A DNA stretch of 64,000 nt from Tubulanus polymorphus (taxonomy: Eukaryota; Animalia; Nemertea): assembly GCF_964204645.1 (NCBI RefSeq), contig NC_134030.1, forward strand, positions 18,870,210 through 18,934,209, in the 5' to 3' direction. Shown piece by piece: positions 15,895-53,900 of the stretch. How positions within the stretch are numbered: position 1 is the stretch's first letter; each line of letters opens with the position of its first letter. The position numbers and the translations under genes are program-made. A model generated the notes under the pieces. That model was not told the origin of the DNA and searched no databases. It saw nothing but the letters and a program-made list of their open reading frames with translations.

Positions 15895-17684
15895 GAAGTC
15901 TATAAATAGTCTGGAAAAAGGTAAGTAGACTGACGATGGAGAATGTGAATAGAGTTTTCTGCGAAAGTCCATAAAATCCTAATTACCTTTGATGACAACA
16001 TGATTCTCAGATACTGTAGATCTCAGATCCCTTGCGTTCGTGAAGTCAATGCGATGTGTTTTACTGCATGTGCGTTACGCAAAGACGCGGGTGGAAAATA
16101 GCCGTTTACATAATGGAGATTCGTTATTTGCTAAAACTGTTGAAATTGTGAAGATGATTCCCGACCACTCAGACGCACTCGGTATCGTCACTGTCAAATA
16201 ATATATATCGTATTACATTGAAATCAGCAGCTGTGAAACGTACGTCACTGAGCAGAAACTTTCCCGTTGTCCTTGAGATGCTTATTCTGACGATTCAGCA
16301 TAGTCTTCATCCATCCGTCCTCTGAAATGACACCATTCTTGAATCGTTGAATTCACCAATAACGAGATGGTCATCATTAGCTGCTAATTATAATTTTACT
16401 GAATCGTTGATAGTCATCGAGAATGAAAGGGTTGTCATTTGGTAAATAATCATGATTTCGATGAATCTTAAGAATCATGTAGAGTGAGAAGGGCACAAAT
16501 AACTGGTTATAATTTAACTGGAATTTACTTATTTCTATATAGTACGTATGTGAAACATCTGCTACTCAATTATCATGAATTCTGCGTCGATTTATAGAAC
16601 ATGTTACTTGATATAAATATTCGATTTTAAAAAAGCAGCTGGTCATGTAAGTACAGCAATTGTGATTGGAATTGATTCAGATGTACTTCGCATTATTCCA
16701 ATACCGTCAAGTTCACTTAAATTACTCTAATCAATATCCTGTTGGATGATTATTATTCGAATCGATTACTAGGTTATTGAAACCCTTATCCCACCGAATT
16801 AAATGAATTACGCATTGACTTTCTGTAGATTTTAGTACTACCAAACTTCGATGATTGATGTATTGACCTCCTTATACTGTCTGGTCGCGACAATGGTACA
16901 TATTGTACAGCTATGCAGGCGGGTTTGTATATTAATAAAAAAGACTGATGCTTTTTTCCGATGCGGACAGTCGCAAAGACGGACGGATCAACGGACTGAC
17001 CAACAGACGCGGGCAAAAGTTAAGGTACCAAGTTCCCCGCTAAGTCCCCGGAAAAAAGATATTGTTGCGGTAAACTTACAGTATTGTTATAATTCTACGT
17101 TAATTCTACGTCTGCGAATCTTTGCATAATGAATTGAAGCTCAGTCGATTACGTCGCATCGAGTGGACATTCTATACTTAACAACCACTGAAAAACGGTT
17201 GAAGAAATCCTCTGAATTATCGAGAAATTACAAACAAAAGTAGGTGTATACCTGTTTTGAAACACTCTGCATATACGCGTAATGCATCAGCATTAAGGAG
17301 CGACTTGAACGAAACGAAAATAATTTTGAGTATTTTAAAGTATGATTGGGCATATCGAAATAACCACGCGTGGAAACATGAAATTGAGAATTGCTGCTCA
17401 GAGAGATGGTACCGTAATTACTAATATATTGATGTGTATGTCGGAGAGCGAATACTAATGACAGAACGGGGGAAAAATATCATACGCGAGTTCGACAAAA
17501 ATCAGCGGTTGAAAATAATTGCTAGATTTCTAAATTGCCGAGTGAAGCAAATAAATAATTTCACTAGAAAAGAAATATACAATTGTACATCATTTATGAG
17601 TGGAACCTGAAGATATGTGGGCAACCAAGCAGAATTTGAATAGTGAAGGAATTCCTTCATTCTGACGTGACGAAGTTACTCTGT

Positions 17685-20600: not shown

Positions 20601-23600
20601 TGTTATTAGCCAATAATTTAGTTCGTACCAGACATTACGCATATTACTTTACAATTCTCTTTTTAGCCTGAAACCAGCTTTTACACGTGGACTGACGGCA
20701 AACCGTTGAGTTACACAGAGTGGTATAAACCAATAAATAACGACACGATACCGGACGTACTTCAAGGGTTGATATCTTATGAAAGAAAACAACCGACAAA
20801 TGACGTGAATATGCCGTGTACAGCGATGATACTGAATAATCCACGAGGATCAGCGAACTGGGTTCGATTCCCGTGTCAAATAGAAGAGGTTCACGTGCGA
20901 TTCTTTTGTGAATCGGAAAGAAATGATATCAATAAAAGTATGGCTGGGATAGAAAATGATTCAAAACATAATATGATATCCCAAATTAAACAAGGTATTT
21001 TGAATAACAATACGCTGAATACAATGTGTGCAATAGGTTGGTTAGGTATAGATGGACAGTGTTATCAGGTACTGACACGTTGGGAAAATGAGGAAACTTT
21101 TGACGTGGTTAGTGCAAGAGAAATGTGCCGTGAGGTACGCGGGGAAATAGGTATAATACAGGACTTGACGCAAGCCAAGGAGATGATTTTCAGATTTCGT
21201 TATCCGCATCAATATGGCGCTATATTAACTTTGGATTCTAGCAAGCAGTGGATGATACTGAAGCCATTTGTTACCAGGGATGAAATTACTTACGATCAGT
21301 CGGTTAATTGGGTAATGATACCCTGGGAAAATGCAAAAGACAAAATCCATTCTGTTTTGTGTTCCTATAATGTAACTGATGAAGAGTTGGCTTCTTTAAG
21401 TGGTTGTAAATCTTGGCAGTTTAAATGTAACGATCAAAGATGTATCAGCGACCATCGCGTATGTGATACCAGACACGACTGTCGACACGGCGAAGATGAA
21501 CTCAGTTGTACGGATATAAATTCATACAGTCAGTTTCAATGCTTTGATGGTGAGATTGTTTCAATAAGTGGTTACTGTGATTTCATACAGGATTGTGTGG
21601 ATGGTTCTGATGAGAATTCGTGTTTTCATCCCCCGTGTTTGTCCGAGGAATTTCGTTGCATCAGTGGTCAATGTGTCAGTGGGTCGAACAGATGTGGCTA
21701 ATTGTAAAGACATTTCCGATGAAATTGAATGCACCTCTAAACTATGTCAGGGGTTCTTATGTAACAGTGGGGACTGTATCAGTTCTCAGTTGTATCAGGA
21801 TGGAGTTATGGATTGCAGTGGAACTCTTGAGGAAGATGAATTAGTTACGAATCCTTATATTACAGTGAATCCTACGATATATTGCAATATTGAACACCAC
21901 CGTACGACTAACTTCACAGATCTCTGTACAGAATCTAATGAACAGAGATGTTCTTTCGATTCTCCTCATTGCTATTCTAGACGTCACAGGTGTATTCTAG
22001 AACGAATGACAAATGGTTTCCCAGTTTGTAGAAACCTTGAGCACGTATTGAAATGTGAAGAATTTGTATGCCCAGTTGGTACAGTGAAATGTCCAGCATC
22101 GTACTGTATTCCTGTCAGACAAGTGTGCGATGGTCGGTCAGATTGTCCTAATTCAGAAGACGAGGGAAACTGCGAAACTTTGTCATGTCCGGGAATGTTT
22201 AAATGTAGCCAGGAAAATCGATGTATTCCACAGACTGAAGTTTGTGATGGTGTTGTTAATTGTAAACGTACAACTGATGACGAGGCTTTCTGTAACGTCT
22301 CGTGTCCTAAAGGTTGTGAATGTCAAGGTCATTCGATCAAATGCAACAATTCTCGGCTAGCAGATGTAAATGGCATTTTCCAAGCATCAACGCGAATTTT
22401 AATTTTGTCAAATAACCAAATTGTCTTGGACGTCTTTACATTTTCCCAATACGTTTATCTCCACATGCTCAACCTCACCGCCAATGAATTGTCTTACCTT
22501 TTACCAAACTCGTTCAAGAACCTGCATAACTTACATACATTAGACCTCACGCACAATAATATAACATCATTATCCACAAATACGTTTACTGGTCTGTATA
22601 GTTTGAAAGAGTTATTCATAACTGAAAACCCACTACGTCGTTTAGAGGATGACACCTTCCAAGATTTAAAGTCACTTCAAGTTCTTGATCTTCATGGACT
22701 TTCCTTGTTCGTGCTTGACAGATTCGTATTTAGAGGTCTATCTTCTTTACGATCGTTGAATGTCAGTGGTAACAGAATACGTCGTATTTCACTATTCGCA
22801 TTTTTTGGATTAACTACACTTGAGACCCTCGATATAACCGATAATTACAAAGTCATTTCTGTAGATAGACAAGTTTTTGACAATGTAACGACATTAGCAT
22901 TTCTAACGTCTGATGCTTATAAATTTTGCTGCATGGCTCCGAATGTTGACCAGTGCCTTCCCGAAGCTGATCAATTTTCCTCCTGTTCAGATCTTATTGG
23001 GAATACAGCTCTCAGAGCTATCATCTGGGTCATCGCTTCATGTAGTTTCTTTGCTAACGGATTTGTCATTTCCCTTCGCATTCGAGCGATTCGATTCTCC
23101 TCCTCAAATCCATCCTCAGACATCATCATTATAAACGTTGCTTTATGTGATTTTATGATGTCTATATATTTGTTTCTGATCGCTGGAGCCGATTACATAT
23201 ATAAGGGAATCTACTTTCTCCATTCAGAATCGTGGACGGACAGTGCGCTGTGTCGTCTTGCCGGGGTCGTGGTATCTATTTCGTGTGAAGGCTCATTGAT
23301 ATTCTTGCTCATAATGACGCGTCATAGATATTCAAATATCGTTAATCCTTTTTCTGTGAGCCTGATTACATCTCCGAGATACGTGTCCATTATTTGCTGT
23401 ATATGTTGGGTTGTCCTGGGCATTATTGCAATACTACCTCTTACACCTGTCCCGTACTTCGGAAGCAATTTCTACGGCGCTACAGGGGTTTGTTTACCTA
23501 TGAATTTGATTTCCATTGATGTCGATGCCTGGCATTATTCGTTCATTATTTTTTCTCTGTCTACGTCAGTCATACTTGCTACGATAATGGTGACTTACGC

Positions 23601-23732
23601 GCAAATGTACAGGCTCGTATCTGGAAGCAGGTCTGGTTCAGGAAGAGCTGATCCTACCGAACTGATTTTGGCCCGCAGAAGTTTGGTGATAAATCTTTGT
23701 AATGTAATTTGCTGGTTACCGTTAATTATCGT
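17685..23732 (+). pseudogene. GRL101-like GPCR copy 2 (exons 17685-18887, 19154-20473, 20667-~23732); open to stop 21699-21701 after an 8-bp deletion; TM7 deleted
   Basis: ATG and signal peptide MDRLGALFLASLIVWRVIIAHA are intact and exons 1-2 are open. ACGGAGTA is missing in LDLa3, and the 7TM breaks into (TA)n after TM6. Confidence 0.85.
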
Positions 23733-23750
23733 ATTTAACGTAATTATCGT

Positions 23751-27625: not shown

Positions 27626-30600
27626 ATGGATCGATAAGGAGCGCTGTTTCTAGCGTCGCTGATCGTCTGGCGCGTTAACATCGCACACGCTGATCCGTCT
27701 GACTCTGTGACGATCAGTTCGTCTTGTAACAACACTTGGTACCCCGTCGATTCTACGTCCGGTTACATCGTTTCACCGAATTACCCGTCGTTAACGCGCG
27801 GTGTTGAATGTCGTTGGTTCGTCAACAGCTCTTTACCGGGAACTTTCAACATCAAACTATACTACGACATCGAGCCGTCGATATTCTGTAGTGCTGACTA
27901 CCTTCTCGTTGATGGTTCGGATAACAGATTCTGCGGCGAAGGAGAATATGGCATCCGCCGTAACGGTTTGATCTCGCCGTTGTTGTTTAGGAGTAACGTC
28001 GATGGTGCGCGAGGCAGTCGGGTTTATATAACATATCGTTATGAACGAAATCGATTGAAAGTCAGCTGTGGTTTGACATTTACTACTCCCAGATTCAAGG
28101 AAATTATTACATCGGAGGGATACAAATATTCTATAAGCCATCTAGAGAATTGTCGTTTGTTCCGGGAATGGATGGGGATGCCATATGGTTTCGCGATGAA
28201 CCTGACTTTGGTCAAGATTAGGGTTAGAATGGAATTTCTTGCTGATCCCGCGACGACTGGTCAAATCTACGACGGATGGAACAGCAGCAGTGAACCTATA
28301 GCTCTCATACCAGTACAAACCGGTCATCCAGCTTCATCATTCTATACTAAGACAAGTAAAACTATTATCTCTCTGCTTGAATATAAACTGAATTTCGATT
28401 TTCAACTTTTGGTTCAGATGTATAAAATATCAGATTGGAACGTCACTAATCCGTTAATCCAAATCTCTAATGACGAGTCTGGAGTGCTCATTCCTGATGA
28501 CAACAGTTTACACGTAATAACCCGATCGAAACACTTACGCTGCTGGTCTATCACAGTGCAGGTGTTACCGTACGTCGTCTTCAACTGGACACGTGATCTC
28601 AGCACATCCGGTGACGTCATTGGTGTATATAAACTAGAAGGGTTACGCGTTGTAGGAACTGATATTTTACTCGGTTACAACTACCTGGAATCACTGAGTG
28701 TTAAATCTGACGGCTTTCTCGTCATACTGTGCGTTTTGATGAGCGCTGATGTGATGATGTCGAAACTAAAAATATCCTACAAAATCAATTCACTAACAAT
28801 AGGTTATTTACACGTTGGGAAATCAGTGGTAAGTACTTCGTCGTGATATCTGTATTGTCGGTATTTACTTCACGATATTAAACTGCGTTCAGCAATTATT
28901 TCTTTCGAAAAATCAAAATGATGATGAAATGTAAGATTATTTCACATCGATATGTATCCTGTGCACGTTTAGTTTTAATGAAATGCACCCATCCAAATTG
29001 TCGTTCATATGAATCTACTTTTTGAAACGTACAACGAGCATATAATATTTTAAGAAGCGATGGAACGTTCATATGATGTTGTTTGTTGTCACAGGTACGC
29101 GACCCGGAGGAATGTTTACAATCATTCAGGCTATTTCCGTTTGTAAAAAGAAAAACGTTGACCTATCGAGTGATCGAACATAAGTTGAAATGGCGAGTGG
29201 AAATATCGGAAAAACGATTTCAACTGGCTGTCTTATCGAGAAACTGCGAGCGAGCTGGATTTTATATATATGATGGTGGTAATTTTACAGCTAGACGCTA
29301 TGGTCCGTATTGTCCTGGTGATACCTATGGTCGGCCCGTCGTCAAGTTGATTACATCAGGAGGATCGGTTACTGTAGTAGGATACGCCTACGACTGGGAT
29401 AATCAGCTAACAGTCAAGACTAACAAACTTTCATGTATCATGCTTCGCGCTACTGAATGTGACGGGTATATGTTAAAGCAGGGAGAAAATCGCCTTAAAA
29501 CGACGTCAGACTGTATCGTGATTCTACCCGAAAACCGACGTCTTCCTTTGAGAAACATTTACATATTATCAGACCGCGAATATCAAATTGATCGATGTGC
29601 TCCGGAATATTTTATATTCGCCAAGTGCCGGCCCGATATGAATATCAGCAGTAGTTTTATTACGGGAAATACCTCAACAAGAACTCCTGTGTTAAACAAG
29701 GTATCATTTAATAGTCCTTATCCTTTTTTGAGACCTGAGCGATTTATCAAACTGAGACGAAAGTGCTATGGTACAAAAAGGGCCGGTCATAGCGGTTTAG
29801 TCCCTAAGGATGTGTGTGGACTTGTGCAATCGCCGAACTATCCGGGACCTGCCGGAATTACTGTTCAAAGAATATTCTATGCAGTCATTTATAAATATCA
29901 TTACGGAAAATTTCGTTATTACAAATTTGTAATCAAATACATTGAAATGATTGAATGCGTTAAACAATCCAGATTCTCTAAAGAAGCAGTGTTGTTCGTA
30001 CAATACGTAAGTGGAAAATTTACTAAAACCGAACACAAACAAACAATCTGTGGACGACACGCAGGGCATATACTTTACAGTCTGATGGCGTCCACACATG
30101 AGTTTCAAGTGACCAACAGAATCCCAACATTTCGGATACAATACATTCTACAAGAATCATTCCCAATAAAAGACCACGAGAATAAGTGTGAGGTGGGATT
30201 TCTATATTCGGGAATTTCATGCGTGAAATACATCACAGATGAACGATTGAATTGGGAGAATGCTGAATTGTACTGTAGACAGAAGTATGCGGGACATCTA
30301 CTAAGTATCAACTCAGAACAGGAGATGAATTCCATTAAAACGTTATTTGCTACAAAGCTTCTTTTAACTGCATATTCGAAGAGAGCACTCATTGTGTTGA
30401 TTGGATTGAAAAAACAGGTAAATCTAATTTAAGTTGCATAAAGGTATTGATAACATTATCGGGAGTTGGGATCTCAGAACATGAAATTTACGGGGGAATT
30501 AACGGCCTCAAGTCTTAACGGTCAAGTTTAATTTCGGCACTAACTGTTATTAGCCAATAATTTAGTTCGTACCAGACATTACGCATATTACTTTACAATT

Positions 30601-33600
30601 CTCTTTTTAGCCTGAAACCAGCTTTTACACGTGGACTGACGGCAAACCGTTGAGTTACACAGAGTGGTATAAACCAATAGATAACGACACGATACCGGAC
30701 GTACTTCAAGGGTTGATATCTTATGAAAGAAAACAACCGACAAATGACGTGAATATGCCGTGTACAGCGATGATACTGAATAATCCACGAGGATCAGCGA
30801 ACTGGGTTCGATTCCCGTGTCAAATAGAAGAGGTTCACGTGCGATTCTTTTGTGAATCGGAAAGAAATGATATCAATAAAAGTATGGCTGGGATAGAAAA
30901 TGATTCAAAACATAATATGATATCCCAAATTAAACAAGGTATTTTGAATAACAATACGCTGAATACAATGAGTGCAATAGGTTGGTTAGGTATAAATGGA
31001 CAATGTTATCAGGTACTGACACGTTGGGAAAATAAGGAAACTTTTGACGTGGTTAGTGCAAGAGAAATGTGCCGTGAGGTACGCGGGGAAATAGGTATAA
31101 TACAGGACTTGACGCAAGCCAAGGAGATGATTTTCAGATTTCGTTATCAGCATCAATATGGCGCTATATTAACTTTGGATTCTAGCAAGCAGTGGATGAT
31201 AATGAAGCCATTTGTTACCAGGGATGAAATTACTTACGATCAGTCGGTTAATTGGGTAATGATACCCTGGGAAAATGCAAATGACAAAATCCATTCTGTT
31301 TTGTGTTCCTATAATGTAACTGATGAAGAGTTGGCTTCTTTAAGTGGTTGTAAATCGTGGCAGTTTAAATGTAACGATCAAAGATGTATCAGCGACCATC
31401 GCGTATGTGATACCAGACACGACTGTCGACACGGCGAAGATGAACTCAGTTGTACGGATATAAATTCATACAGTCAGTTTCAATGCTTTGATGGTGAGAT
31501 TGTATCAATAAGTGGTTATTGTGATTTCATACAGGATTGTGTGGATGGTTCTGATGAGAATTCGTGTTTTCATGCCCCGTGTTTGTCCGAGGAATTTCGT
31601 TGCATCAGTGGTCAATGTGTCAGTGGGTCGAACAGATGTGACGGAGTAGCTAATTGTAATGACAACTCCGATGAAATTGAATGCACCTCTCAACTATGTC
31701 AGGGGTTCTTATGTAACAGTGGGGACTGTATCAGTTCTCAGTTGTATCAGGATGGAGTCGTGGATTGCACTGGAACTCTTGAGGAAGATGAATTAGTTAC
31801 GAATCCTTATATTACAGTGAATCCTACGATATATTGCAATATTGAACACCACTGTACGACTAACTTCACAAATCTCTGTACAGAATCTAATGAACAAAGA
31901 TGTTCTTTCGATTCTCCTCATTGCTATTCTAGACGTCACAGGTGTATTCTAGAACGAATGACAAATGGTTTCCCAGTTTGTAGAAACCTTGAGCACGTAT
32001 TGAAATGTGAAGAATTTGTATGCCCAGTTGGTACAGTGAAATGTCCAGCATCGTACTGTATACCTATCAGACAGGTGTGCGATGGTCGGTCAGATTGTCC
32101 TAATTCAGAAGACGAGCGAAACTGCGAGACTTTGTCATGTCCGGGAATGTTTAAATGTAGCCAGGAAAAGCGATGTATTCCACAGACTGAAGTTTGTGAT
32201 GGTGTTGTGAATTGTAAACGTACAACTGATGACGAGGCTTTCTGTAACGTCACGTGTCCTAAAGGTTGTGAATGTCAAGGGCATTCGATCAAATGCAACA
32301 ATTCTCGGCTCACATATGTAAATGGAATTTTCCAAGCATCAACGCGAATTTTGTCAAATAACCAAATTGTCTTGGACGTCTTTACATTTTCCCAATACGT
32401 TTATCTCCACATGCTCAACCTCACCGCCAATGAATTGTCTTACCTTTAACCAAACTCGTTCAAGAACCTGCATAACTTACATACATTAGACCTCACACAC
32501 AATAACATAACATCATTATCCACAAATACATTTACTGGTCTGTATAGTTTGAAAGAGTTATTCATAACTGAAAACCCACTACGTCGTTTAGAGGATGACA
32601 CCTTCCAAGATTTAAAGTCACTTCAAGTTCTTGATCTTCATGGACTTTCCTTGTTCGTGCTTGACAAATTCGTATTTAGAGGTCTATCTTCTCTACGATC
32701 GTTGAATATCAGTGGTAACAGAATACGTCGTATTTCACTATACGCATTTTTTGGATTAACTACACTTGAGACCCTCGATATAACCGATAATTACAAAGTC
32801 ATTTCTGTAGATAGACAAGTTTTTGACAATGTAACGACATTAGCATTTCTAACGTCTGATGCTTATAAATTTTGCTGCATGGCTCCGAATGTTGACCAGT
32901 GCCTTCCCGAAGCTGATCAATTTTCCTCCTGTTCAGATCTTATTGGGAATACAGCTCTCAGAGCTATCATCTGGGTCATCGCTTCATGTAGTTTCTTTGC
33001 TAACGGATTTGTCATTTCCCTTCGCATCCGAGCGATTCGATTCTCCTCCTCAAATCCATCCTCAGACATCATCATTATAAACGTTGCTTTATGTGATTTT
33101 ATGATGTCTATATATTTGTTTCTGATCGCTGGAGCCGATTACATGTATAAGGGAATCTACTTTCTCCATTCAGAATCGTGGACGGACAGTGCGCTGTGTC
33201 GTCTTGCCGGGGTCGTGGTATCTATTTCGTGTGAAGGCTCATTGACATTCTTGCTCATAATGACGCGTCATAGATATTCAAATATCGTTAATCCTTTTTC
33301 TGTGAGCCTGATTACATCTCCGAAGTACGTGTCCATTATTTGCTGTATATGTTGGGTTGTCCTGGGCATTATTGCATTACTACCTCTTACACCTGTCCCG
33401 TACTTCGGAAGCAATTTCTACGGCGCTACAGGGGTTTGTTTACCTATGAATTTGATTTCCATTGATGTCGATGCCTGGCATTATTCGTTCATTATTTTTT
33501 CTCTGTCTACGTCAGTCATACTTGCTACGATAATGGTGACTTACGCGCAAATGTACAGGCTTGTATCTGGAAGCAGGTCTGGTTCAGGAAGAGCTGATCC

Positions 33601-33853
33601 TACCGAACTGATTTTGGCCCGCAGAAGTTTGGTGATAAATCTTTGTAATGTAATTTGCTGGTTACCGTTAATTATCGTTCAGTTTTGCGCGGTATTTCGG
33701 GTGGAAATACCGAATCAGGTAGCGGCTTGGCTTGGGGTTCTTTTCTTACCAATCAACTCGTCCCTTAATCCCTTTTTATATACAATACTGACTATTGATA
33801 TAAAGTCCATACGAGCAAAAGCTATGCGCCAAATGAATTGGGTGAACAAATGA
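27626..33853 (+). pseudogene. GRL101-like GPCR copy 3 (exons 27626-28828, 29095-30417, 30611-33853) with two in-frame TAA stops
   Basis: TAA at codon 4 (27635-27637) and TTA>TAA at 32447-32449. ORFs 30650 and 32549 are in the same frame and the 7TM is otherwise complete. Confidence 0.85.
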
Positions 33854-37000: not shown

Positions 37001-37713
37001 ACGGACGGATCAACGGACTGACCAACAGACGCGGGCAAAAGTTAAGGTACCAAGTTCCCCGCTAAGTCCCCGGGACAAAGATATTGTTGCGGTAAACTTG
37101 CAGAGTATTGTTATAATTCTACGTTTATTCTACGTCTGCGAATCTTTGCATAATGAATTGAAGCTCAGTCGATTACGTCGCATCGAGTGGACATTCTATA
37201 CTTAACAACCCCTGAAAAACGGTTGAAGAAATCCTCTGAATTGCCGAGAAATTACAAACAAAAGTAGGTGTATACCTGTTTTGAAACACTCTGCATATAC
37301 TCGTAATGCATCAGCAAAAAATTGATATTCAGGAACGACTTGAACGAAACGAAAATAATTTTGAGTATTTCAAAGTATGATTGGGCATATCGAAATAATC
37401 ACGCGTGGAAACATGAAATTGAGAATTGCTGCTCAGAGCGATGGTGCCGTAATTACTAATATATTGATGTGTATGTCGGAGAGCTAGTACTAATGACAGA
37501 ACGGGGGAAAATATCATACGCGAGTTCGACAAAAATCAGCGGTTGAAAATAATTGCTAGATTTCTAAATTGCTGAGTGAAGCAAATAGATAATTTCAGTA
37601 GAAAGATACAATTGTTCATCATTTATGAGTGGAACCTGAAGATATGTGGGCAACCAAGCAGAATTTGAACAGTGAAGGAATTCCTTCATTCTGACGTGAA
37701 GAAGTTACTCTGT

Positions 37714-40700
37714 ATGGATCGATTGAGAGCGCTGTTTATAGCGTCACTGATCGTCTGGCGAGGTTTAATCGCACACGCTGATCTGTCTGACTCTGTGACG
37801 ATCAGTTCGTCTTGTCACAACACTTGGTTCCCCGTCGATTCTACGTCCGGTTACATCGTTTCACCGAATTACCCGTCGTTAACGCGCGGTGTTGAATGTC
37901 GTTGGTTCGTCAACAGCTCTTTACCGGGAACTTTCAACATCAAACTATACTACGACATCGAGCCGTCGATATTCTGTAGTGATAACTACCTTCTCGTCGG
38001 TGAGTCCGATAACAGATTCTGCGGTGAAGGAAAACATGAAATCCGCCGTAACGATTCGATGTCGTTGATGTTTAGGAGTAACGTCGATGGTGCGCGGGGT
38101 AGTCGGGTTTATATCACCTATCGTTATGAAAGAAGCCGATTGAGAATCAGTCATCGCTGCAGTGAATCTAATTTTCAAATGGATGAAATGAAAATGTCGA
38201 CAGGATACAAATTCACGATGTTGATGCGTGATGGTTGTCAGATCTTCCTGGAATGGGACGCCCTCTCGACTGGTTCAGCGTTGAATTTGACATTCGCAGA
38301 TTTTGACCTAAAACTCCCACCTTCTGTCGATCCAGCGTCAAGTTTTCGAATCAATGACGGCTGGAACACCAGCAGTGAACCGATAGCGCTTATGGGTGAA
38401 CAACGCGGACAGCAGCCGTCATCGTTTTATACTAAAACAAACAGTGCCGTTTTCAGTTTGCTACATGGGCATGAGGTTACCACAACACTATCAGTTCAGA
38501 TCTATAGAATGTCTGATTGGAACGTCTCTAATCCGTCAATTCGAATGTCTTATAACGAGTCCGGAGTCCTTATTCCAGACGACAACAGTTTACACGTAAT
38601 AACTCGATCAAAACACTTACACTGCTGGTCTATCACAGTGCAGGTGTTACAGTACGTCGTCTTCAACTGGACACGTGATCTCAGCACATCCGGTGACGTC
38701 ATTGGTGTATATAAACTAGAAGGCTTACGCGTTGTAGGAACTGATATTTCACTCGGTTACAACTACCTGGAATCACTGAGTGCTAATTCTGACGGCTTTC
38801 TCGTCATACTGTGCGTTTTAATAAGACCAGGTGTTTTACAGTCGAATGTAAAAATTGAATTTGAAGTTAAATCTATCTCTATAGGAGACGTACAAGTCTA
38901 CAAACCCAAGGTGAGTTAAGATGTCCACTCGGTTATAGCTAAATTTAATGTAACTTATTTTGTGAACCAAAGAATATACATCGTCAAACACCTTTTTTTC
39001 TAATTGCGATAAAGAATATTCAATTTCAAAACACGGTGCCCTCGCGGTGCAACTGATCGAAAAAGTATCTGAAAATTTTAATCAGCCGTTCATTAGTCAT
39101 TCATTTATCCTTCCCTTCCGAACGCAGAGCCGTCGGAAGGAATTTTTCAGTGGCGAGGCTTATCTCTGAAGGGTGGTCTGGGGGCCCTCCCCTAGAAAAA
39201 TTTTGAAAATTCAATCACCGGAGATGCGTTTTGGGGCCATTTCACGGTCTCATTCACAGAAGCATTTGAAGTCGTGAGCCAACCACCTAGTACAGAGAAC
39301 GACGAGCTGCTACGCGGTACAGCATGCTTTCGAAAAAAATTTTGTTAAGCAAAAAATTGGGGCGGCTTGGGCCGCCCCTTCCTCCCCTGTTCCGACGGCC
39401 CTGGAACGGATGAAATACCGTATGAAATATGGTATGAAATGACGTATGAATATGAAATAACTTCCAGTGAAGTGAGCGTTTGTCAGAGATGACGCCTGCT
39501 GACATAAACAATAAAGTTCTGAAATTACCCATTTAGAAATCACATTTCTCTGTAATGGCTAAAACAAAATTCGAACCAGTAGCATATTTGATATTTGTTT
39601 TAATATATCACATTTGACAATATACATTTTACGTAATATTTCGATGTTTCTTCTATTTACAGCGGCACCGCTGAAAGATATTTATGAATTCCTAATAGAA
39701 ACTAAACTCATTGATATTGTAGGTAAAGCGCGATCGGTTTATATCGTCAAACCCCTTTCCTTTTTCTAAGATGAGGTTTACGTATGGTGTATTCAAGTAT
39801 GAATTCGAATGGAAAGTTGAAATCTACGACATCGATCTGGAATTAGCGGTGCTGTCTGTGAATTGCAAAAATGCTGGATTTTATATATATGATGGTGGTA
39901 ATTTCACGGCTAGACGATACGGTCCGTATTGCCCCAGCCCATCGGGATATAGACGAAGCGTCGTCAGTCTGATTACATCAGGCGGCCCGGTGATCATGGT
40001 GGGCTATTCCATTAACAGTCAAATCCAGCACAAGGGCGGCGTGGTATTACGTCCGTCTGACTGTGACGGCTACGCGCTACGGGAAGGAGAATACAGCGTT
40101 ACAGTGCCGCTGACGTCACGCTGTTTCACGGTTTCACCCGAAAAACGAGACGTTCCATTACATCATAGTATCGACATATTATCACCGCACGAATATGAAA
40201 TGAACTCGTGTTTGCCTGATTTTATCTCGTCATATACGCCGTGTAGTCGTTATTTGTCTATCGATAGGCAGCGCCTCGAAAACAGTCTCGTACTGCACAC
40301 TGTTACAGTAAATGATACGCGCTTGTTCAGAAGACGCCCGTACATCATTGAATTGAGGCGCGTATGTCAAACGACGGATAGACGTAACAGACGGTTCGGC
40401 GATGCGGAATCGAATAAAGGCGACTGCGGAATCTTTCAGTCACCGAACTACCCGGCTTCAGTCGGATATTCGAGTAATACGATCAGATACAATCTCAAGT
40501 TCAAATGGAATACAGCCCCGATAGAGTTTTACCGATTCGTTATAAAATATATGGAAATAACACCGTGCATGAAAAGTTCAAAAGGGGTTCGATACTCAAT
40601 CTTTTACGTCGAGGTAATGAAATACAAAGACAGCGAGACGAAACATGGAGATAAACTATGCGGAATATACGCCCGAGCAGGATTACAGTTTTATAGTATC

Positions 40701-43700
40701 AGTACAGGTCCCCTCCTCTGGTTCGAACTGAAAAACGATATTCCGAAATTCCGTATTCAATACATTTTAGAGAAACAATTTTTGATGAAACCGCGCGATA
40801 TTGTCTGCAAATCGGGACTCATAGATTCAGGAGTTTCCTGCGTCAAATATATCAGAGACAAACGTCTGAAATGGGAGAACGCTGAAATATACTGTCAACA
40901 GAAATACGGAGGACATCTTCTCAGTATCAACTCGGAACATGAAATGATTGCTATTAAAAGATTATTTGCTAGTAAACTTCTTCGAGATGGCTATACACAG
41001 AGATCACTTGTGGTGATGATCGGCTCGAAACTGCAGGTAAACTATACACGAATTTTCAAACGTCTTCTGTCAACAGAGATGTTTTAAATTTTCAGCATTT
41101 ATTTCTAGCCTAAACTTGGTTATTACACATGGACTGATGGGAAACCCTTGAGCTACACAGAGTGGTTTAAACCAACGGGAAACGAAACGATACCAGCAGT
41201 TATTCGAGGATTGATATCTTCTCAACGAAAACAACCGATAAATGACGTCAATGCGCCGTGTACGGCGATGATACTGAATAACCCACGAGGATCGGCGAAC
41301 TGGGTTCGATTCCCGTGTCAAATCGAAGACGACTACACGAGTTTCATGTGTGAATTTGACGGAGTTGATGTTGGAGAAAAACGGGGAAATGCAACTGTCA
41401 ACAGTAGTGAATATGGACCAATTGAAATGATGTTTTCATTTAATTATATTCCGAGAAACAATTCACCGTGTAGACGAGGTTGGCTTGGTTTAGCCGGACA
41501 GTGTTATCAGATACTGACACACTGGACAAACAAACAGGGTTTGGATATCAGAGGAGCGAGAGAAATGTGTCGTGAAATCCACGGAGAAATAACTCATCAC
41601 GAATCTGATATCATTAAAAACATAATTGAAACATTGCACTATCGGCACCAGTATGGCGCTGTACTGACCTCTGGTGACAGAATTATAAAACCAATAATCA
41701 CTAGAGATGACATAACTCATACGCAGATAGTTAAATGGATGATAAAACAGTTCGATAATGTCACAGATTTAGCGCATTCAGTGCTATGTTCCTATAATGT
41801 AACTGATGAAGAGTTGGCTTCTACAAGCGGTTGTAAATCGTGGCAGTTTAAATGTAACGATCAAAGATGTATCAGCGACCATCGCGTATGTGATACTAGA
41901 AACGACTGTCAACACGGTGAAGATGAACTCGATTGTTCGGGTTCAAACTTACACAGTCAGTTCCACTGCTCAGATGGACGAGTTGTATCAATAAGTGGTT
42001 TGTGTAATTTCATAAATGATTGTGTTGATGGTTCTGATGAGAACTCGTGTCGTCATCCTCCGTGTCTGTCCGAGCAATTTCGCTGCAAGAGTGGTCAATG
42101 TGTCAGTAAGTATAAAAGATGTGACGGAGTAACTGATTGTAAAGACGGCTCCGATGAAATTGAATGCACCTCTCAACTGTGCCAGGGGTTTTTGTGCAAC
42201 AGTGGAGATTGTATCAGTTATCAGTTGTATCAGGATGGTGTCGTGGATTGCAGTGGAAGTCTTGAAGAAGATGAATTAGTAACAAATGCTAATGTTACGT
42301 TGAATCCTACAGTTAACTGTAATGATGGAAACCTATGTACGACTAACTTCACAAATCTCTGTACGGATTCCGATGAACAAAGATGTTCTTTCGATTCTCC
42401 TCATTGCTATTCTAGACGTCGAAGGTGTATTTTGGAGAGAATGACAAATGGTTACCCAGTTTGTAGAAATCTTCAGCATATATTGAGATGTGAAACATTT
42501 GATTGTCCAGCTGGTACTGTAAAATGTCCAGCATCTTACTGTATACCGATGGGACAGGTGTGCAATGGTCGACCCGATTGTCCTAATTCAGAAGACGAGC
42601 GAAACTGCGAGACTATGTCATGTCCCGGCATGTTCAAATGTGGCCAGGAAAACCGATGCATTCCCCAATCTGAAGTTTGTGATGGTGTTGTGAATTGTAA
42701 CCATACTACTGATGACGAGGCTTTCTGTAACGTAACATGTCCTGGGGGTTGTAAATGTCAAGGCCTTTTGATCGACTGCGGAAATGCCGGTTTAACAAAT
42801 ATTACGGATCTTTTCTCGGCATCAACTCGAGTTCTGATTCTGTCGAATAACACAATTATCATGGAGATATCGACATTTGTTTCATATGATTATCTTCGGT
42901 TGCTCAACATCTCCTTAAATAAATTGTTTTATATTTTACCGAATGCATTCTCAAAGCTGCATAATCTAAACACATTAGACCTTACGTATAACAACGTAAC
43001 ATCATTATACACAAATACATTCACCGGGCTGTATAGTTTGAAAGAGTTATTCATAACTAAAAATCCACTACGTCATTTAGCGGACGATACGTTCCAAGAG
43101 TTGAGATCACTTAGATCTCTCGATCTTCACGGACTTTCCTTGGTTTTACTTGGAGGAAATGTGTTTAGAGGTTTATCTACATTACAGTCTTTGAATATCA
43201 GCAGTAACAGAATTCATCATATTTCACGATATGCATTTGTCGGTTTATCTTCACTTGAAATTCTAGATATCAGCAACAACTACGAAGTTATTTCTGTCGA
43301 CAGAACGGTTTTCAATAATCTGACATCATTGCGCTCCTTACGGTCTGACGCCTACAAGTTTTGCTGCATGGTTCCGAGTGTTGACCGGTGCATTCCCGAA
43401 GCAGATCAATTTTCATCCTGCTCTGATCTGATGGGTAACACAGCCCTCAGAGCTATCATCTGGGTCATCTCTACGTTCAGTTTCTTTCTGAACAGTATCG
43501 TCATTTTATTCCGTGTTCGATCATTTCGACTTTCATCCTCCGAAAAGCGTAACATATCTTCTGACATCATTATCATCAGTATCGCAGCTTGTGATTTTCT
43601 GATGTCGATTTATTTGTTTCTGATCGCGGGAGCTGACTACGTGTATAAAGGAGTTTATTTCCTATATTCTGAAACTTGGACGGACAGTTCATTGTGTAGT

Positions 43701-44339
43701 TTCGCTGGTGTTATGGTTACTATTTCTTGTGAAGGCTCATTGACGTTTCTATTCATTCTAACGCGTCACAGATATTCAAATATCGTTGATCCATTTTCTG
43801 GAAGCTCGATTACATCTCCGAGATATGTGTCCATTATTTCTTGCCTATGTTGGCTCATCGTAAGTGTAATTTCTTTAATACCACTGTCACAATCGACTTA
43901 TTTCGGCAATACATTTTACGGATCTACTGGAGTTTGTTTACCTATGAATTTAATTTCAATTGATAGCAATGCCTGGCAATATTCATTCGCTATTTTTGCC
44001 GTGTTTAACTCGGTCGTACTTGCTACAATAATGATGACGTATGCACAGATGTACAGACTCGTATCCGGAAGCAGGTCCGGCTCGGGTAGAGCTGATCCTA
44101 CCGAATTGATTCTGGCACGTAGAAGTTTAGTGATAAATCTGTGTAATTTATTTTGCTGGTTACCGATAATTATCGTTCAGTTTTGCGCTGTATTCCGAGT
44201 CGAGATACCGAACCAAGTGGCGGCTTGGTTGGCGGTACTTTTCCTACCGATCAACTCGTCACTGAATCCACTTCTTTACACCATCCTCACTATCGATATA
44301 AAATCAATACGAGCAAAAACCAAACGCCGAAACTATTAG
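37714..44339 (+). CDS. Intact G-protein coupled receptor GRL101-like (LGR/relaxin-receptor related), ~1913 aa: SP, CUB/CUB-like domains, 2 C-type lectin domains, ~6-7 LDLa, LRRNT+~7-8 LRR, 7TM; exons 37714-38910, 39723-41036, 41109-44339
   Basis: Motifs: SGYIVSPNYP and CGIFQSPNYP (CUB); W-x-x-A-x-x-x-C, HLLSINS and WTDG (CLECT); DCxDGSDE (LDLa); LxxLxLxxN (LRR); CWLP and NPLLY (7TM). Donors AAG|gtgagt and CAG|gtaaac, acceptors tgtag|GTA (or an in-frame alternative at 39770) and tctag|CCT keep the frame with no stops. Confidence 0.9.
39125..39403. mobile_element. Non-autonomous TIR element (hAT-like termini CAG(A/G)GCCGTCGGAA) in intron 1 of the intact GPCR
   Basis: 14-bp imperfect TIRs flanked by a GAACG direct repeat (not the canonical 8 bp). 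A second copy lies at ~51219-51732. Confidence 0.7.
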
Positions 44340-50948: not shown

Positions 50949-53900
50949 CTAAGTTTGTTGAACTAGCACTCCTTGAGTCGTCGATTTCGCCTTGTCTTCG
51001 CCGTGTTTCTTATCGACGTCGTCCTCTTCGCCCCGGACCCGGATGTTGTATTTCTCGCGGTAGTCGTTCAACTCTTTGCCTTTGGCTTCCAGTTGTTTCG
51101 TCAAATTCGTAACTAACATTCCGATCTGCGGGGGAAAAAGAATGATTACGATTTCATCAATCGATCGCCATTAAAACGAGGACATCAACTACTGTGGCAA
51201 TTGAGGATGCTGCTCACCCAGCTGTCGGAAGGGATTTTGCAGTGGTGAGGCTTATTTCTGTACAGAGGGTCAGGGGGCCTTCCCCCAGAAAAAATGTTGT
51301 AAAATTCAATTGCCGGAGATGCGTTTTGGGGTCTCATTCACAGAAGACGAGAAGTCGTGAGCCACCCACCTAGTACAGAGAACGCATTCAACACATTTTT
51401 GGGTAACCCTTTCAGTGCTGACTAATCAATACCCCATAGTGGTGGCGATAATTTGAAATATTTGAAAAATTCCACTCTAGTGTGCTGCATAACAGGAATA
51501 CCACAATAGTGTCTACACCGCGGCGCGGTGTATCGTTAGTTACTAATATTTCACTGTGTTTGACAGGTGCTGCCATCTTTCAATAGAGATAAAAACTAAT
51601 TAATATTGACATAAATACACCGCAGTGCGGTGTACTAGCAAAATCCATCACCCATTTATACACCCTACTGTGGTGTAGACGCACTGAAAGGGTTAAGCAA
51701 AAAAGTGGGGCGGCCCCGTTCCGACGGCTCTGCCCAGCCAGGGCGAACTTCCATTTTCTCCGCTAGTCTTCTAGTGGACGGACCTAATAACCGAAAGCAC
51801 TATGATAGTTCGGTCATAAGGTATTTCACAGCGTCAGCCATCTTGGAACCGGGCCTGAATAACTTGGATTCTATTCGAGTAGAAATAATAATAGTTCTTA
51901 CTTGTTCTTTATTGTTCACCAACGCAGGAGAAACGTCTTTAACAGTTCGTTCAACCAGTATTCCACCAACCAAACGATAACATTTCCTATCGCCATCTTT
52001 AATATCCTTCAGGGTATCAATTACTAGTCTGCAAAACAATAATACCCAAACATGACACTTGACCAAATGTAGTTAGTTACCAAATCGTTGGTGGTAAGGC
52101 AAAATAAAAAAAAATTAGTTGTTTATCGTCTTTTCATTGTTTATTTCAGATCACGGATAGCGACTGGAAGTGTGGCGCCACAAGCAAAACAAATACAATT
52201 CAATTCATAGAACTTTATTAACTTAAGATTTTAAAATCGATCTAAATACGCTCCACAACCGGAAATCCACGCTGTGTACGCTCCATAACTGAATATTGAC
52301 TTTTTGTTATTCAGCGAAGGCACTTCGTCGATCGATAAATCATTTTGTTTGCTGCTATACTGTCCTACAATCGACATGAAACGGTAGCTATGGCAAACAT
52401 TTTCGATTGGAACCAAAATAGAACAAAATAAAAAAAAAGAAAGAAATTGGGTCGAGTATATTTCGTAGGGTCGGGCGGGGACGATAAGCAACTAATTTTT
52501 TTTATTTGGCCTAAGCTTTTTATAATCGGATGAGCTTATACCAACGTTAGGGATGACAAGGGCCAAAACACGGTTGAAAAAAGTAACCCTCAAAAATATA
52601 CTTTCTATTCACTTCAGTCCACAATTAATGGATTAATTCACAAACTAACACAGGTACCTTTCGAAATAATCCAATTTTATGTATGTTTCGAGTGATTAAT
52701 CACCATTATTTTGAGAAATTAATCAATTTCCCCACAAATTTCACCAGTGGCCGCCATTTCTGCATATTACATGTGGCATGATAGACAAAGTGACCTACAA
52801 GGATTTACATATAAAACTTCCAAAACGAAACAACAATTTTTATTTTTGATGGTTTTTCCAACTTATATTTCAAATCTTCGTGATTTCCATAATAAATAAT
52901 GCAAAGGTAAATTCTGGTTTAAGAAAAATGTGAATAAGTGTTGATTTCTTAATTTTTTCAATTTCGTCGTTTCGTTAGTTTGTCTTGTGGTCCTGGCCTC
53001 AGTCCACACGCTTTCAAAATGGCCGCCGTTGAATCGACGAAAATTTACTCTCACTTTACGGCCGATTTGCACTTGGATTAAGATCGTCATGTGAGGTGTT
53101 ATAGGTATCAAACAAACAACGAATCTGTTGGGCGTTGATTACAACAAAATTAGACGGATATCTTAAAAGACCAGAAAATGCCAGGCAAATTACTCGTCAG
53201 TCAAATTGGCTGACGAAAATGGATCCAGAGGGGGGGTGGGCTTTCAGGGGTCGTGAACACCCCCTGCTCAGCTACCAAAAAATAATTTTTAATTGTTTTC
53301 TAGAAGGAATGTACTCAACATGAAGTGATTGTTCATATGACAAATGAACTGGCAATCAGCAGTGACAAGTTCTAGCGCTGTTCTTACGAGATGATTGGAT
53401 TGTAAGTCGACCTGAGCTTGCTTTAGGTGGAATTTTCGCAAGTTGATAGGCCTATAGGAGTTCGAGGGCAGCGATACCGAACCCTGGCAAGTGAGGATGA
53501 ACAGGGTTCTGCGCGTCCTACCCCGGCGGCGGGGATTCGAACCTGATGGCATCGAGATTGCCACGGCACGAAACCCTGCCACACTAGACCGAGTACGCAG
53601 CTACACGCGCAGCTTCGATGATGTCATTATCAGCCAATCAGAACTCCCGTTTTATTTTAGCCCAGATTTTCCCATTTATAGTTCTTCCTTCATTTTTACC
53701 TCAGTGATTATAGGCCTACAACGAGCAATCTGATTGGTGCTGCAAGTTTCCGTGCGGTGAAGCTGTGCATGTACCTGCGCACCCGGTCTACTGTGGCAGG
53801 GGTTCGTACCGTTGCTGGGTGTAGTGATGCCATCAGGTTCGAACCTCGAATCCCTGCCGAGGGAGGGAGAATATGGTTTGATGAGGTGAGGGGAGAAGAG

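What the first reader, a model, noticed from the sequence alone, without database searches (positions are those of the whole stretch)
37714..44339. Very large CUB + C-type-lectin + LDLa + LRR GPCR: candidate lectin-type sensor receptor
Seen: a ~1913-aa spliced ORF joining several CUB-like domains and two CLECT domains to a GRL101-type LDLa-LRR-7TM core. Known: Lymnaea GRL101 and RXFP-type LGRs carry LDLa+LRR ectodomains, and CUB and CLECT are typical extracellular recognition modules. Inference: a glycan or pattern-sensing GPCR family under birth-and-death evolution, with an immune or chemosensory role.
Basis: partly seen in the sequence, partly recalled or inferred. Interest (0 to 1): 0.8.

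Follow-up and report, generated by a model that had tools for sequence, protein, structure and literature searches.

The report
Giant GRL101-like receptor gene, intact copy
This is an intact three-exon ribbon-worm gene for a 1,897-residue cell-surface G-protein-coupled receptor of the GRL101/relaxin-receptor type. It belongs to a family of several hundred copies, looks like a sensor repertoire, has a domain layout already seen in other invertebrates, and has a lectin-like part that lacks the sugar-binding residues.

Summary
The gene is real at the stated coordinates. Its exons are 37714-38910, 39771-41036 and 41109-44339, all phase 0 with GT-AG introns, giving 1,897 aa rather than ~1,913.

- **Shown:** a signal peptide, one Pfam CUB, 5-6 LDLa modules, LRRs and a rhodopsin-type 7TM closest to RXFP1.
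- **Weaker:** the other "CUB-like" modules rest on fold or embedding evidence only. The first lectin-like domain is split by intron 2. The second is degenerate.
- **Lectin claim fails:** the first lectin-like domain reads QPI and WVR where sugar-binding lectins have QPD/EPN and WND. It is also among the most constant modules between copies.

The genome is Tubulanus (ribbon worm). Exon 2 has at least 99 confirmed relatives and 364 candidates in it. This copy is the only intact one among ten copies and fragments: five in the window and four 97%-identical copies nearby are all broken.

The order CUB, lectin-like, LDLa, LRR, 7TM already exists in predicted scallop, flatworm and amphioxus proteins. 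GRL101 expansions with sensory or immune readings are published for snails.

This scan reported the same family several times elsewhere in this genome. Verdict: a new member of a known kind. Exons were never joined; all searches ran exon by exon.

The parts
37714..38910 (+). Exon 1 (399 aa), from the start ATG; donor GT at 38911
   Evidence: ORF and sequence. GTGAGT-type donor at the same position in 10/10 paralogs.
37714..37779 (+). Signal peptide (about 22 aa, hydrophobic core, AHA-D cleavage-type end)
   Evidence: Read from the translation. The first 20 aa are 81% conserved in 20 paralogs. No predictor was run.
37834..38094 (+). CUB domain 1 (exon-1 aa 41-127), constant between copies
   Evidence: Pfam CUB E 1.3e-5, 26 bits against a 21.4 cut-off. 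hhalign against reference CUBs gives 87% probability. Conservation 82-93%. dS only 0.09 against relatives.
38137..38523 (+). Module b (exon-1 aa 142-270): variable beta-sandwich, CUB-compatible fold
   Evidence: AF2 pLDDT 64-88. VIA Z 6.6-8.1 to PCPE-1, TSG-6, neuropilin and cubilin CUBs, tied with cupins. Conservation 55-66%.
38524..38910 (+). Module c (exon-1 aa 271-399): unassigned. Its core (aa 281-360) is nearly invariant and its tail is variable.
   Evidence: Conservation 91-98% for aa 281-360 and 46-70% for aa 361-399. No Pfam or hhalign match. Low-confidence model.
38911..39770 (+). Intron 1 (860 nt), with a ~280-bp interspersed-repeat insert
   Evidence: GT at 38911-2 and AG at 39769-70. 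The insert is absent from sister copy L007, and a related piece lies at 51220-51384.
39771..41036 (+). Exon 2 (422 aa), the most divergent exon (47-71% identity to paralogs)
   Evidence: Donor GT at the same position in 22/22 paralogs. The ATG at its start is not conserved in paralogs.
40011..40790 (+). Variable region of exon 2 (aa 81-340), including a module with the CUB N-terminal motif (aa 218-228)
   Evidence: Conservation 41-71%. Motif match to CUB1 over 17 columns, E 3.7e-4. Embedding lead to CUB clusters. Homologous stretch in Macrostomum GRL101-like proteins, E 1.7e-11.
40791..41036 (+). First lectin-like domain (CTLD1), N-terminal half
   Evidence: Pfam Lectin_C E 0.012, aa 365-398. 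Most hits of the exon-2 profile fall on this part. Aligns with lectin-like domains of Argopecten, Gigantopelta and Branchiostoma receptors.
41037..41108 (+). Intron 2 (72 nt), which splits CTLD1
   Evidence: GT at 41037-8 and AG at 41107-8, with stop codons inside. AG acceptor in 9/9 paralogs.
41109..44339 (+). Exon 3 (1,076 aa plus stop)
41109..41354 (+). CTLD1, C-terminal half: WTDG motif, QPI at the QPD/EPN position, WVR at the WND position
   Evidence: Alignments. Conservation 82-95%.
41355..41462 (+). Variable, N-glycosylation-sequon-rich linker
   Evidence: Conservation 44-51%, with length variation. dN/dS about 0.9-1.6 against the three closest intact relatives and 0.41 against L002.
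41463..41804 (+). Second, degenerate lectin-like module (CTLD2, exon-3 aa 119-232)
   Evidence: C..GW....CY...W...A..C pattern and four conserved cysteines. No Pfam or PDB support. Embedding lead to Lectin_C, 0.90.
41805..42743 (+). LDLa array (5 Pfam-supported modules plus 1 degenerate) with a cysteine-rich insert
   Evidence: Pfam Ldl_recept_a E 3.9e-36, 5 stretches. Conservation 79-96%. dN/dS 0.15-0.22.
42744..43418 (+). LRR N-cap, leucine-rich repeats and hinge
   Evidence: Pfam LRR_8 E 2.5e-26 and LRR_5. Aligns with the RXFP1 LRR and hinge.
43419..44336 (+). Rhodopsin-type 7TM and short tail: HRY in place of E/DRY, CWLP and NPLLY present
   Evidence: Pfam 7tm_1 E 2e-20. RXFP1 7TMW E 5.3e-53. 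Motifs.

Best explanation
The stretch is an intact, spliced gene of a ribbon worm (Tubulanus). It encodes a 1,897-aa type-C leucine-rich-repeat GPCR of the GRL101 kind.

From outside to inside, the protein runs: signal peptide; CUB; five further beta-rich modules, at least one CUB-like; a lectin-like domain without sugar-binding residues; a variable linker; a degenerate second lectin-like module; 5-6 LDLa modules; LRRs and hinge; and a relaxin-receptor-like 7TM.

It is one working member of a tandemly arrayed family of several hundred copies. Certain outer modules differ strongly between copies: exon-1 aa 141-260, exon-2 aa 81-340, the linker and CTLD2. CUB1, module c, CTLD1, the LDLa array and the 7TM are kept nearly constant.

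Most likely working (inferred):
1. The variable beta-sandwich modules bind an external macromolecular cue from water, prey or conspecifics, in the manner of a chemosensory repertoire.
2. The constant CTLD1-LDLa-LRR-hinge unit passes binding on to the 7TM, as the LDLa and LRR ectodomain does in RXFP1.
3. The 7TM signals through a G protein.

Shown here: the gene model, domain content, family size, mosaic conservation and purifying selection. Inferred: the ligand class, the cell type and the coupling.
For: - **Gene model.**. Splice sites are kept at the same positions in all paralogs tested. The three-exon order is kept in 20/20 loci on 7 contigs. CTLD1 is only complete after splicing. Neither exon 2 nor exon 3 has a conserved start or signal peptide of its own.
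- **Core identity.** Pfam. RXFP1 is the best solved relative at E 5e-53, against 3e-29 for LHCGR and 1e-16 for LGR4. Named GRL101(-like) proteins are the best outside hits.
- **Family.** 364 candidates and 99 confirmed exon-2 matches in the 268-Mb genome, 96 of them open.
- **Working copy.** No stops or frameshifts. dN/dS is 0.15-0.8 in every module against relatives, while all nine neighbouring or sister copies are broken.
- **Mosaic of variable and constant modules.**
- **Sensory reading.** Published GRL101 expansions in apple snails (29-132 genes in tandem clusters) are expressed in tentacles and labial palps (PMC6573481). GRL101-like expression is tentacle-specific in Charonia (PMC13403566).
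Against: - No RNA or expression data could be consulted. Records of this genome are withheld from the protein and contig look-ups.
- No ligand is known for any GRL101-type receptor (PMC11863921).
- No module reaches dN/dS clearly above 1, so selection for diversity is not shown at module level.
- In module b, variation is not concentrated in loops: strands 0.67 against loops 0.66, p 0.79.
- The acidic residue of E/DRY is replaced family-wide (HRY, HRF, YRF). Coupling may therefore differ from RXFP1.
- The models of exons 1 and 2 are mostly of low confidence.
- A snail cluster of related receptors lies in a parasite-resistance locus, which favours an immune role (PMC12297450).
Confidence: 0.5

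Rival explanations
1. Immune pattern-recognition receptor. The CUB and lectin-like modules bind microbial or parasite surface molecules, and the GPCR core triggers a defence response.
For: CUB and C-type-lectin-like domains are common in invertebrate recognition and complement-type proteins (established knowledge). Twelve lectin-LDLa-LRR GRL101-like genes fill the SudRes2 schistosome-resistance region of Biomphalaria sudanica, and its authors propose recognition by the lectin domain (PMC12297450). A large tandem family with many pseudogenes also fits immune receptor families.
Against: CTLD1 lacks four of the five canonical calcium and sugar ligands (QPI, WVR). It is near-constant between copies, so it is not a diversified glycan reader. 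The snail association is positional: the lead variants lie in a neighbouring Zn-RING-IAP gene. There are no induction or expression data for the worm. Published expression of expanded GRL101 genes is in sensory organs.
Confidence: 0.25
2. Endocrine receptor. Like its relaxin-receptor relatives, it binds an endogenous insulin- or relaxin-like or other peptide hormone through the LRRs and LDLa modules. The N-terminal modules are accessory.
For: The 7TM and LRR are closest to RXFP1. GRL101 has been proposed as an IGF-type receptor (PMC8286064). The LDLa-LRR-7TM part is strongly conserved (dN/dS 0.15-0.35).
Against: Hundreds of copies with divergent outer modules and frequent pseudogenes do not fit a hormone receptor. 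Such receptors are single-copy in most animals. The family sits on a long stem branch outside the RXFP clade.
Confidence: 0.05
3. A young duplicate with no function of its own. The open frame survives by chance in a decaying array, and the gene is silent or on its way to becoming a pseudogene.
For: All five other copies in the window and all four 97%-identical sister copies are broken, some by shared lesions. The region is a pseudogene-rich block. No expression evidence is available.
Against: There is no lesion in 5,691 coding bases, and all four splice sites are canonical. dN/dS is below 1 in every module against intact relatives 2 Mb away. My rough estimate for about 1.5% neutral change is 3-4 expected stop codons, so an intact frame by chance is unlikely (inference, about 0.03).
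Confidence: 0.1

Closest known systems
GRL101 of Lymnaea stagnalis and its bilaterian homologues (type C2 leucine-rich-repeat GPCRs; orphan)
   Same: LDLa array, then LRRs, then a rhodopsin-type 7TM related to relaxin receptors. Proteins named GRL101(-like) are the best outside hits at 34-37% identity. No ligand is known.
   Different: Lymnaea GRL101 is described with 12 LDLa and 6 LRR modules and no CUB or lectin part. This gene has 5-6 LDLa modules behind about 1,050 aa of CUB, CUB-like and lectin-like modules. It reads HRY instead of E/DRY. It belongs to a family of hundreds on a long separate branch.
Predicted CUB, lectin, LDLa, LRR, 7TM proteins of other animals: Argopecten irradians GRL101-like (P0160), Macrostomum lignano PAA57333 (P0138), Branchiostoma GRL101-like/'RXFP1' (P0123), an unnamed 1,742-aa protein (P0182); without lectin: Haliotis (P0002), Diadema (P0164)
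   Same: The same order of domain types along the chain. The Macrostomum proteins also align with exon-2 aa 155-419, E 1.7e-11.
   Different: These are automatic predictions and none has been studied. Their CUB and lectin domains pass Pfam, while most N-terminal modules here do not. Argopecten has QPD and Gigantopelta (P0006, a lectin-LDLa-LRR-7TM protein) EPD at the sugar-motif position, where this gene has QPI. They keep E/DRY.
Biomphalaria sudanica SudRes2 cluster of GRL101-like GPCRs (PMC12297450)
   Same: A tandem cluster of lectin-like, LDLa, LRR GPCR genes with truncated members and copy-number differences. A recognition-receptor role is proposed.
   Different: It has 12 genes in 440 kb, against hundreds here. 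No CUB modules are reported. The link to resistance is positional.
Ampullariid (apple snail) GRL101 expansion (PMC6573481)
   Same: A lineage-specific burst of GRL101 genes in tandem arrays, read as environmental sensors.
   Different: It has 29-132 genes per genome, and expression in tentacles and labial palps is shown. For the worm, expression is unknown, the copy number is higher and the ectodomain is larger.
Human relaxin receptor RXFP1 (PDB 7TMW), type C1
   Same: The best solved relative: E 5.3e-53 across the last LRRs, hinge and all seven helices, with CWxP and NPxxY aligned. It has an LDLa plus LRR ectodomain. In RXFP1 the LDLa module is needed for activation (established knowledge, not tested here).
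   Different: RXFP1 has one LDLa module, no CUB or lectin modules and a known peptide ligand. The RXFP clade (100/100) excludes the worm family.

Membership tests
Type C LGR / GRL101-like (type C2) | Rhodopsin-class 7TM most similar to relaxin-receptor-type LGRs | tested here: met
   Pfam 7tm_1 E 2e-20. RXFP1 E 5.3e-53, against LHCGR 3e-29, TSHR 2e-23 and LGR4 1e-16.
Type C LGR / GRL101-like (type C2) | Leucine-rich repeats directly N-terminal to the 7TM | tested here: met
   LRR_8 E 2.5e-26 in 3 stretches, plus LRR_5. Aligns with the RXFP1 LRR and hinge.
Type C LGR / GRL101-like (type C2) | Several LDLa modules N-terminal to the LRRs (one in type C1) | tested here: met
   Ldl_recept_a E 3.9e-36 in 5 stretches. 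A sixth, degenerate module was read from the translation.
Type C LGR / GRL101-like (type C2) | Groups with GRL101 rather than with RXFP/Lgr3/Lgr4 (type C1) in a 7TM tree | tested here: inconclusive
   The worm clade (100/100, stem 1.61) lies outside the RXFP clade (100/100). Its place among the GRL101-like rows is unresolved. There was no type A or B outgroup and no Lymnaea sequence in the tree.
Class A GPCR activation switches | E/DRY, CWxP, NPxxY | tested here: inconclusive
   R3.50, CWLP and NPLLY are present. The acidic residue before R is H, and H, Y or Q across the family, where all eight outside GRL101-like proteins have E or D.
CUB domain | Match to the Pfam CUB profile above the gathering score | tested here: met
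   Exon-1 aa 41-127: 26 bits against 21.4. This holds for one domain only.
CUB domain | Further CUB domains ('several') | tested here: inconclusive
   Module b has a fold at Z 6.6-8.1 to CUBs, tied with cupins. hhalign of modules b to f against CUB gives at most 2% probability. There is an embedding lead. The exon-2 model was unusable.
C-type lectin-like domain (fold) | CTLD sequence signature (conserved cysteines; alpha-helix-1 motif W..A...C..-G-HL-SI; WTDG) | tested here: met
   This holds for CTLD1 only, with the two exon halves aligned separately to lectin-like domains of four GRL101-like proteins. Pfam on the N-half gives E 0.012. The C-half aligns with mannose-receptor CRD4. CTLD2 is inconclusive.
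Carbohydrate-binding C-type lectin (CRD) | Calcium site 2 and sugar ligands: EPN or QPD motif plus WND | tested here: not met
   QPI and WVR stand at the aligned positions. The same residues are near-invariant in 16 paralogs.
Relaxin-family peptide receptor (type C1, RXFP1/2) | Single LDLa module and membership of the RXFP clade | tested here: not met
   It has 5-6 LDLa modules and is excluded from the RXFP clade at 100/100.

The most novel reading that the evidence does not exclude
The several hundred copies may form a germline-encoded combinatorial recognition repertoire built on a GPCR. Gene conversion and unequal crossing-over would keep a constant transducer (CUB1, module c, CTLD1, LDLa, 7TM) homogenised, while cassettes of variable beta-sandwich modules are shuffled and diversified. 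The family-wide loss of the acidic DRY residue would mark a changed, perhaps ligand-gated-off or constitutively primed, signalling mode. That would be a sensor system with no described counterpart among leucine-rich-repeat GPCRs.
Probability: 0.12. Interest if true: 0.8.

Novelty: new member of a known kind. Interest (0 to 1): 0.42.

Why it matters
GRL101 has had no known ligand since 1994. The family described here has at least 99 confirmed and about 360 candidate copies in one small genome. Its copies have sharply alternating variable and constant ectodomain modules. That argues that this receptor type can serve as a general sensor scaffold rather than a hormone receptor.

The family also offers many natural ectodomain variants on one signalling core for finding ligands. 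For this particular gene the result is more modest. It is an ordinary, intact member. Its lectin-like domain should not be taken as a glycan reader.

Tried and rejected
- **AlphaFold2 of exon 2** with 21 paralogs gave mean pLDDT 44, so it was not used for fold search.
- **Foldseek on the exon-1 model** gave TM at most 0.19, with cubilin at rank 2. This was uninformative.
- **hhalign of modules b to f** against each other and against a four-sequence CUB reference found no repeat relation beyond a 17-column motif.
- **Pfam on 16 paralogs of the exon-3 N-terminus** found no Lectin_C. A PDB profile search gave only E 0.04 to mannose-receptor CRD4.
- **BLASTP of exons 1 and 2 against the Haliotis CUB-bearing GRL101-like protein** found nothing.
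- **The exon-2 profile against 1.84 billion representatives** found no hit below 1e-30. This is not evidence of novelty, because this genome's own records are withheld.
- **My first by-eye mapping of the EPN position to 'TGN'** was wrong. An alignment with real lectin-like domains replaced it with QPI.
- **A test for loop-restricted variation in module b** was negative.
- **AATAAA** is no more frequent than chance. The nearest copy downstream of the stop is at 44621.
- **A search for a separate, closer GRL101 orthologue in the genome** found only 37-40% matches, mostly family members.
Full report
**Gene model.** The region holds three long + strand ORFs. Reading the junctions gives three exons:
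- Exon 1 is 37714-38910. It begins at an ATG followed by a hydrophobic signal-peptide-like stretch, and a donor GTGAGT starts at 38911.
- Exon 2 is 39771-41036, with the acceptor AG at 39769-70 and a donor GT at 41037.
- Exon 3 is 41109-44336, with the acceptor AG at 41107-8 and the stop at 44337-9.

All junctions are phase 0, and the three pieces translate without stops into 399, 422 and 1,076 aa. The total is 1,897 aa. Every search, alignment and fold was done exon by exon, by reference.

**Are the exons one gene?** No RNA data were available. Records of this genome are withheld from the look-ups. The indirect evidence is strong:
- In 20 of 20 paralogous loci fetched from seven contigs, the three exons lie in the same order and spacing.
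- GT follows the last exon-1 codon in 10/10 paralogs that align to the end of the exon. GT follows the last exon-2 codon in 22/22.
- AG precedes exon 2 in 4/4 paralogs and exon 3 in 9/9.
- Intron 2 cuts a C-type-lectin-like domain in two. The N-half ends exon 2 (Pfam Lectin_C, E 0.012). The C-half, starting with the WTDG motif, opens exon 3.
- The ATG at the start of exon 2 is not conserved in paralogs, and exon 3 has no start or signal peptide of its own.

**Domain content.**
- Exon 3 carries Ldl_recept_a (5 stretches, E 4e-36), LRR_8 and LRR_5, and 7tm_1 (E 2e-20).
- Exon 1 has one CUB above Pfam's cut-off at aa 41-127. hhalign against CUBs cut from database hits gives 87% probability.
- The AlphaFold2 model of exon 1 is confident only for aa 142-270. 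That part is a beta-sandwich that matches PCPE-1, TSG-6, neuropilin, cubilin, Kremen and C1s CUBs at Z 6.6-8.1 with 12-16% identity. It is tied with cupins, and that Z range is common background.
- The exon-2 model was unusable (pLDDT 44).
- Exon 2 shows the CUB N-terminal motif at aa 218-228 only. A language-model look-up points to CUB clusters at 0.90-0.93, which is a lead only.
- About 500 aa therefore remain as beta-rich modules that match no Pfam family.
- The second lectin-like module (exon-3 aa 119-232) has the N-terminal cysteine and tryptophan pattern. It has no Pfam or PDB support and only an embedding lead.

**The lectin claim.** I aligned the two exon halves separately with Pfam-supported lectin-like domains of four GRL101-like receptors. 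The sugar-motif position reads QPD in Argopecten, EPD in Gigantopelta, EPE in Branchiostoma and QPI here. The WND position reads WHD, WED, WEN and WVR here. Most calcium and sugar ligands are therefore missing. The same residues are nearly invariant in 16 paralogs. This domain is among the most conserved parts of the protein (81-95%). It is not a diversified glycan reader.

**Organism and family.**
- The best outside hit of exon 3 is a Tubulanus polymorphus protein. That protein matches another contig of this genome at 99% and 92% over its two parts. The genome is Tubulanus.
- Exon 2 alone has 364 first-look candidates and 99 confirmed matches (all E below 1e-112, 96 open) in the 268-Mb assembly.
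- Earlier notes of this scan describe the same family, put at 270-400 copies, at other places in the genome. I used them as leads and re-derived the points cited here.

**Local context.** The window is a tandem array:
- Copy A is a 3' end at 3-1232.
- Copy B is at 5201-11148.
- Copy C is an inverted fragment at 13523-15896.
- Copy D is at 17685-23733.
- Copy E is at 27626-33832.
- Copy F is this gene.

B, D and E are 97.6% identical in DNA. B and D share an 8-bp deletion in the third LDLa module, so a pseudogene was itself duplicated. E has in-frame stops.

The four closest relatives of F are about 97% identical over 7.7 kb and lie 80-205 kb upstream. All are broken: by frameshifts and stops in three of them, by a stop shared between two of those, and by a truncation in the fourth. 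F is the only intact copy of the ten.

**Evolutionary pattern.** Across 17-21 paralogs, conservation alternates along the chain:

| Module | Conservation |
|---|---|
| CUB1 | 82-93% |
| Exon-1 aa 141-260 | 55-66% |
| Exon-1 aa 281-360 | 91-98% |
| Exon-2 aa 81-340 | 41-71% |
| CTLD1 | 81-95% |
| Linker | 44-51% |
| CTLD2 | 55-77% |
| LDLa array | 79-96% |
| LRRs | 72-89% |
| 7TM | 73-99% |

- Against intact relatives, dN/dS is below 1 in every module (0.15-0.8) and about 1 only in the linker.
- dS itself ranges from 0.09 in CUB1 to 0.7-0.9 in exon-2 aa 210-340.
- The 690 bp upstream of the ATG are still 92.7% identical between F and D.
- That mosaic fits gene conversion of some segments.
- In module b, variation is no higher in loops than in strands.

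**Classification.**
- RXFP1 is by far the best solved relative.
- A 7TM-only search ranks mollusc GRL101(-like) proteins above relaxin receptors.
- In a 32-row tree, the worm family is a 100/100 clade on a long stem (1.61) outside the 100/100 RXFP clade. It is unresolved among the GRL101-like rows. No outgroup was available.
- The family reads HRY, HRF or YRF, and QRY in the RefSeq protein, where eight outside GRL101-like proteins have E/DR. CWxP and NPxxY are kept.
- No clearly closer single-copy GRL101 orthologue was found in the genome.

**What is known.**
- The order CUB, lectin-like, LDLa, LRR, 7TM occurs in predicted proteins of Argopecten, Macrostomum, Branchiostoma and an unnamed source. 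CUB-LDLa-LRR-7TM occurs in Haliotis and Diadema.
- Macrostomum proteins also align with exon-2 aa 155-419.
- Published cases include a 12-gene lectin-LDLa-LRR GRL101-like cluster in a schistosome-resistance region of Biomphalaria (PMC12297450).
- Apple snails have 29-132 GRL101 genes in tandem clusters, expressed in tentacles and labial palps (PMC6573481).
- Charonia shows tentacle-specific expression (PMC13403566).
- GRL101 remains an orphan type C2 receptor (PMC11863921), with a proposed IGF link (PMC8286064).
- I found no paper on the Tubulanus family.

**Reading.** The gene is an intact member of a known receptor kind, in an unusually large family. I favour a sensory repertoire for external macromolecular cues (about 0.5) over an immune recognition role (0.25), a decaying duplicate (0.1) or a hormone receptor (0.05). 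In this reading the variable beta-sandwich modules bind and the constant CTLD1-LDLa-LRR-7TM unit transduces.

**Limits.** There are no transcript data. The models are of low confidence outside exon-1 aa 142-270. The family counts are lower bounds. The tree has no outgroup.

Noticed in passing
window 38911-39770 (about 39128-39403) and 51220-51384: Intron 1 carries a ~280-bp insert that is absent from the sister copy L007. A related 177-bp piece (81%) lies elsewhere in the window. It is probably a small interspersed repeat.
   Followed up: partly
window 37023-38150 against 17001-18124: About 690 bp of upstream non-coding DNA plus the first 440 bp of exon 1 are 92.7% identical between this gene and copy D. 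The middle of the two genes no longer aligns at DNA level. This suggests a converted or shared 5' end and promoter.
   Followed up: partly
window 9236 and 21696 (copies B and D); L005 and L006, exon-3 codon ~562: Disabling lesions are shared between copies: an 8-bp deletion in LDLa3 in B and D, and a stop codon in L005 and L006. Pseudogenes were therefore themselves duplicated.
   Followed up: yes
window 43761-43775 (exon-3 aa 885-889) and all paralogs: The acidic residue of the E/DRY motif is replaced family-wide (HRY, HRF, YRF, QRY), while the arginine is kept. Eight outside GRL101-like proteins have E or D.
   Followed up: partly
L001 2918-7594 (-) and L002 2962-7635 (+) (G000:C6 about 21.32 and 21.00 Mb): In two paralogs, exon 2, the 84-nt intron 2 and exon 3 form one open frame of 1,557-1,558 aa. 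The GT donor is still present, so this is an intron without stop codons, not an intron loss.
   Followed up: partly
It was not examined here.
   Followed up: no
G000:C1:4375254-4377065 (+): The best genomic match to Patella GRL101 (39%, open frame 772 aa) lies on a contig where none of the other family matches listed in these searches lies. It may be a shorter, non-array GRL101-type gene.
   Followed up: no
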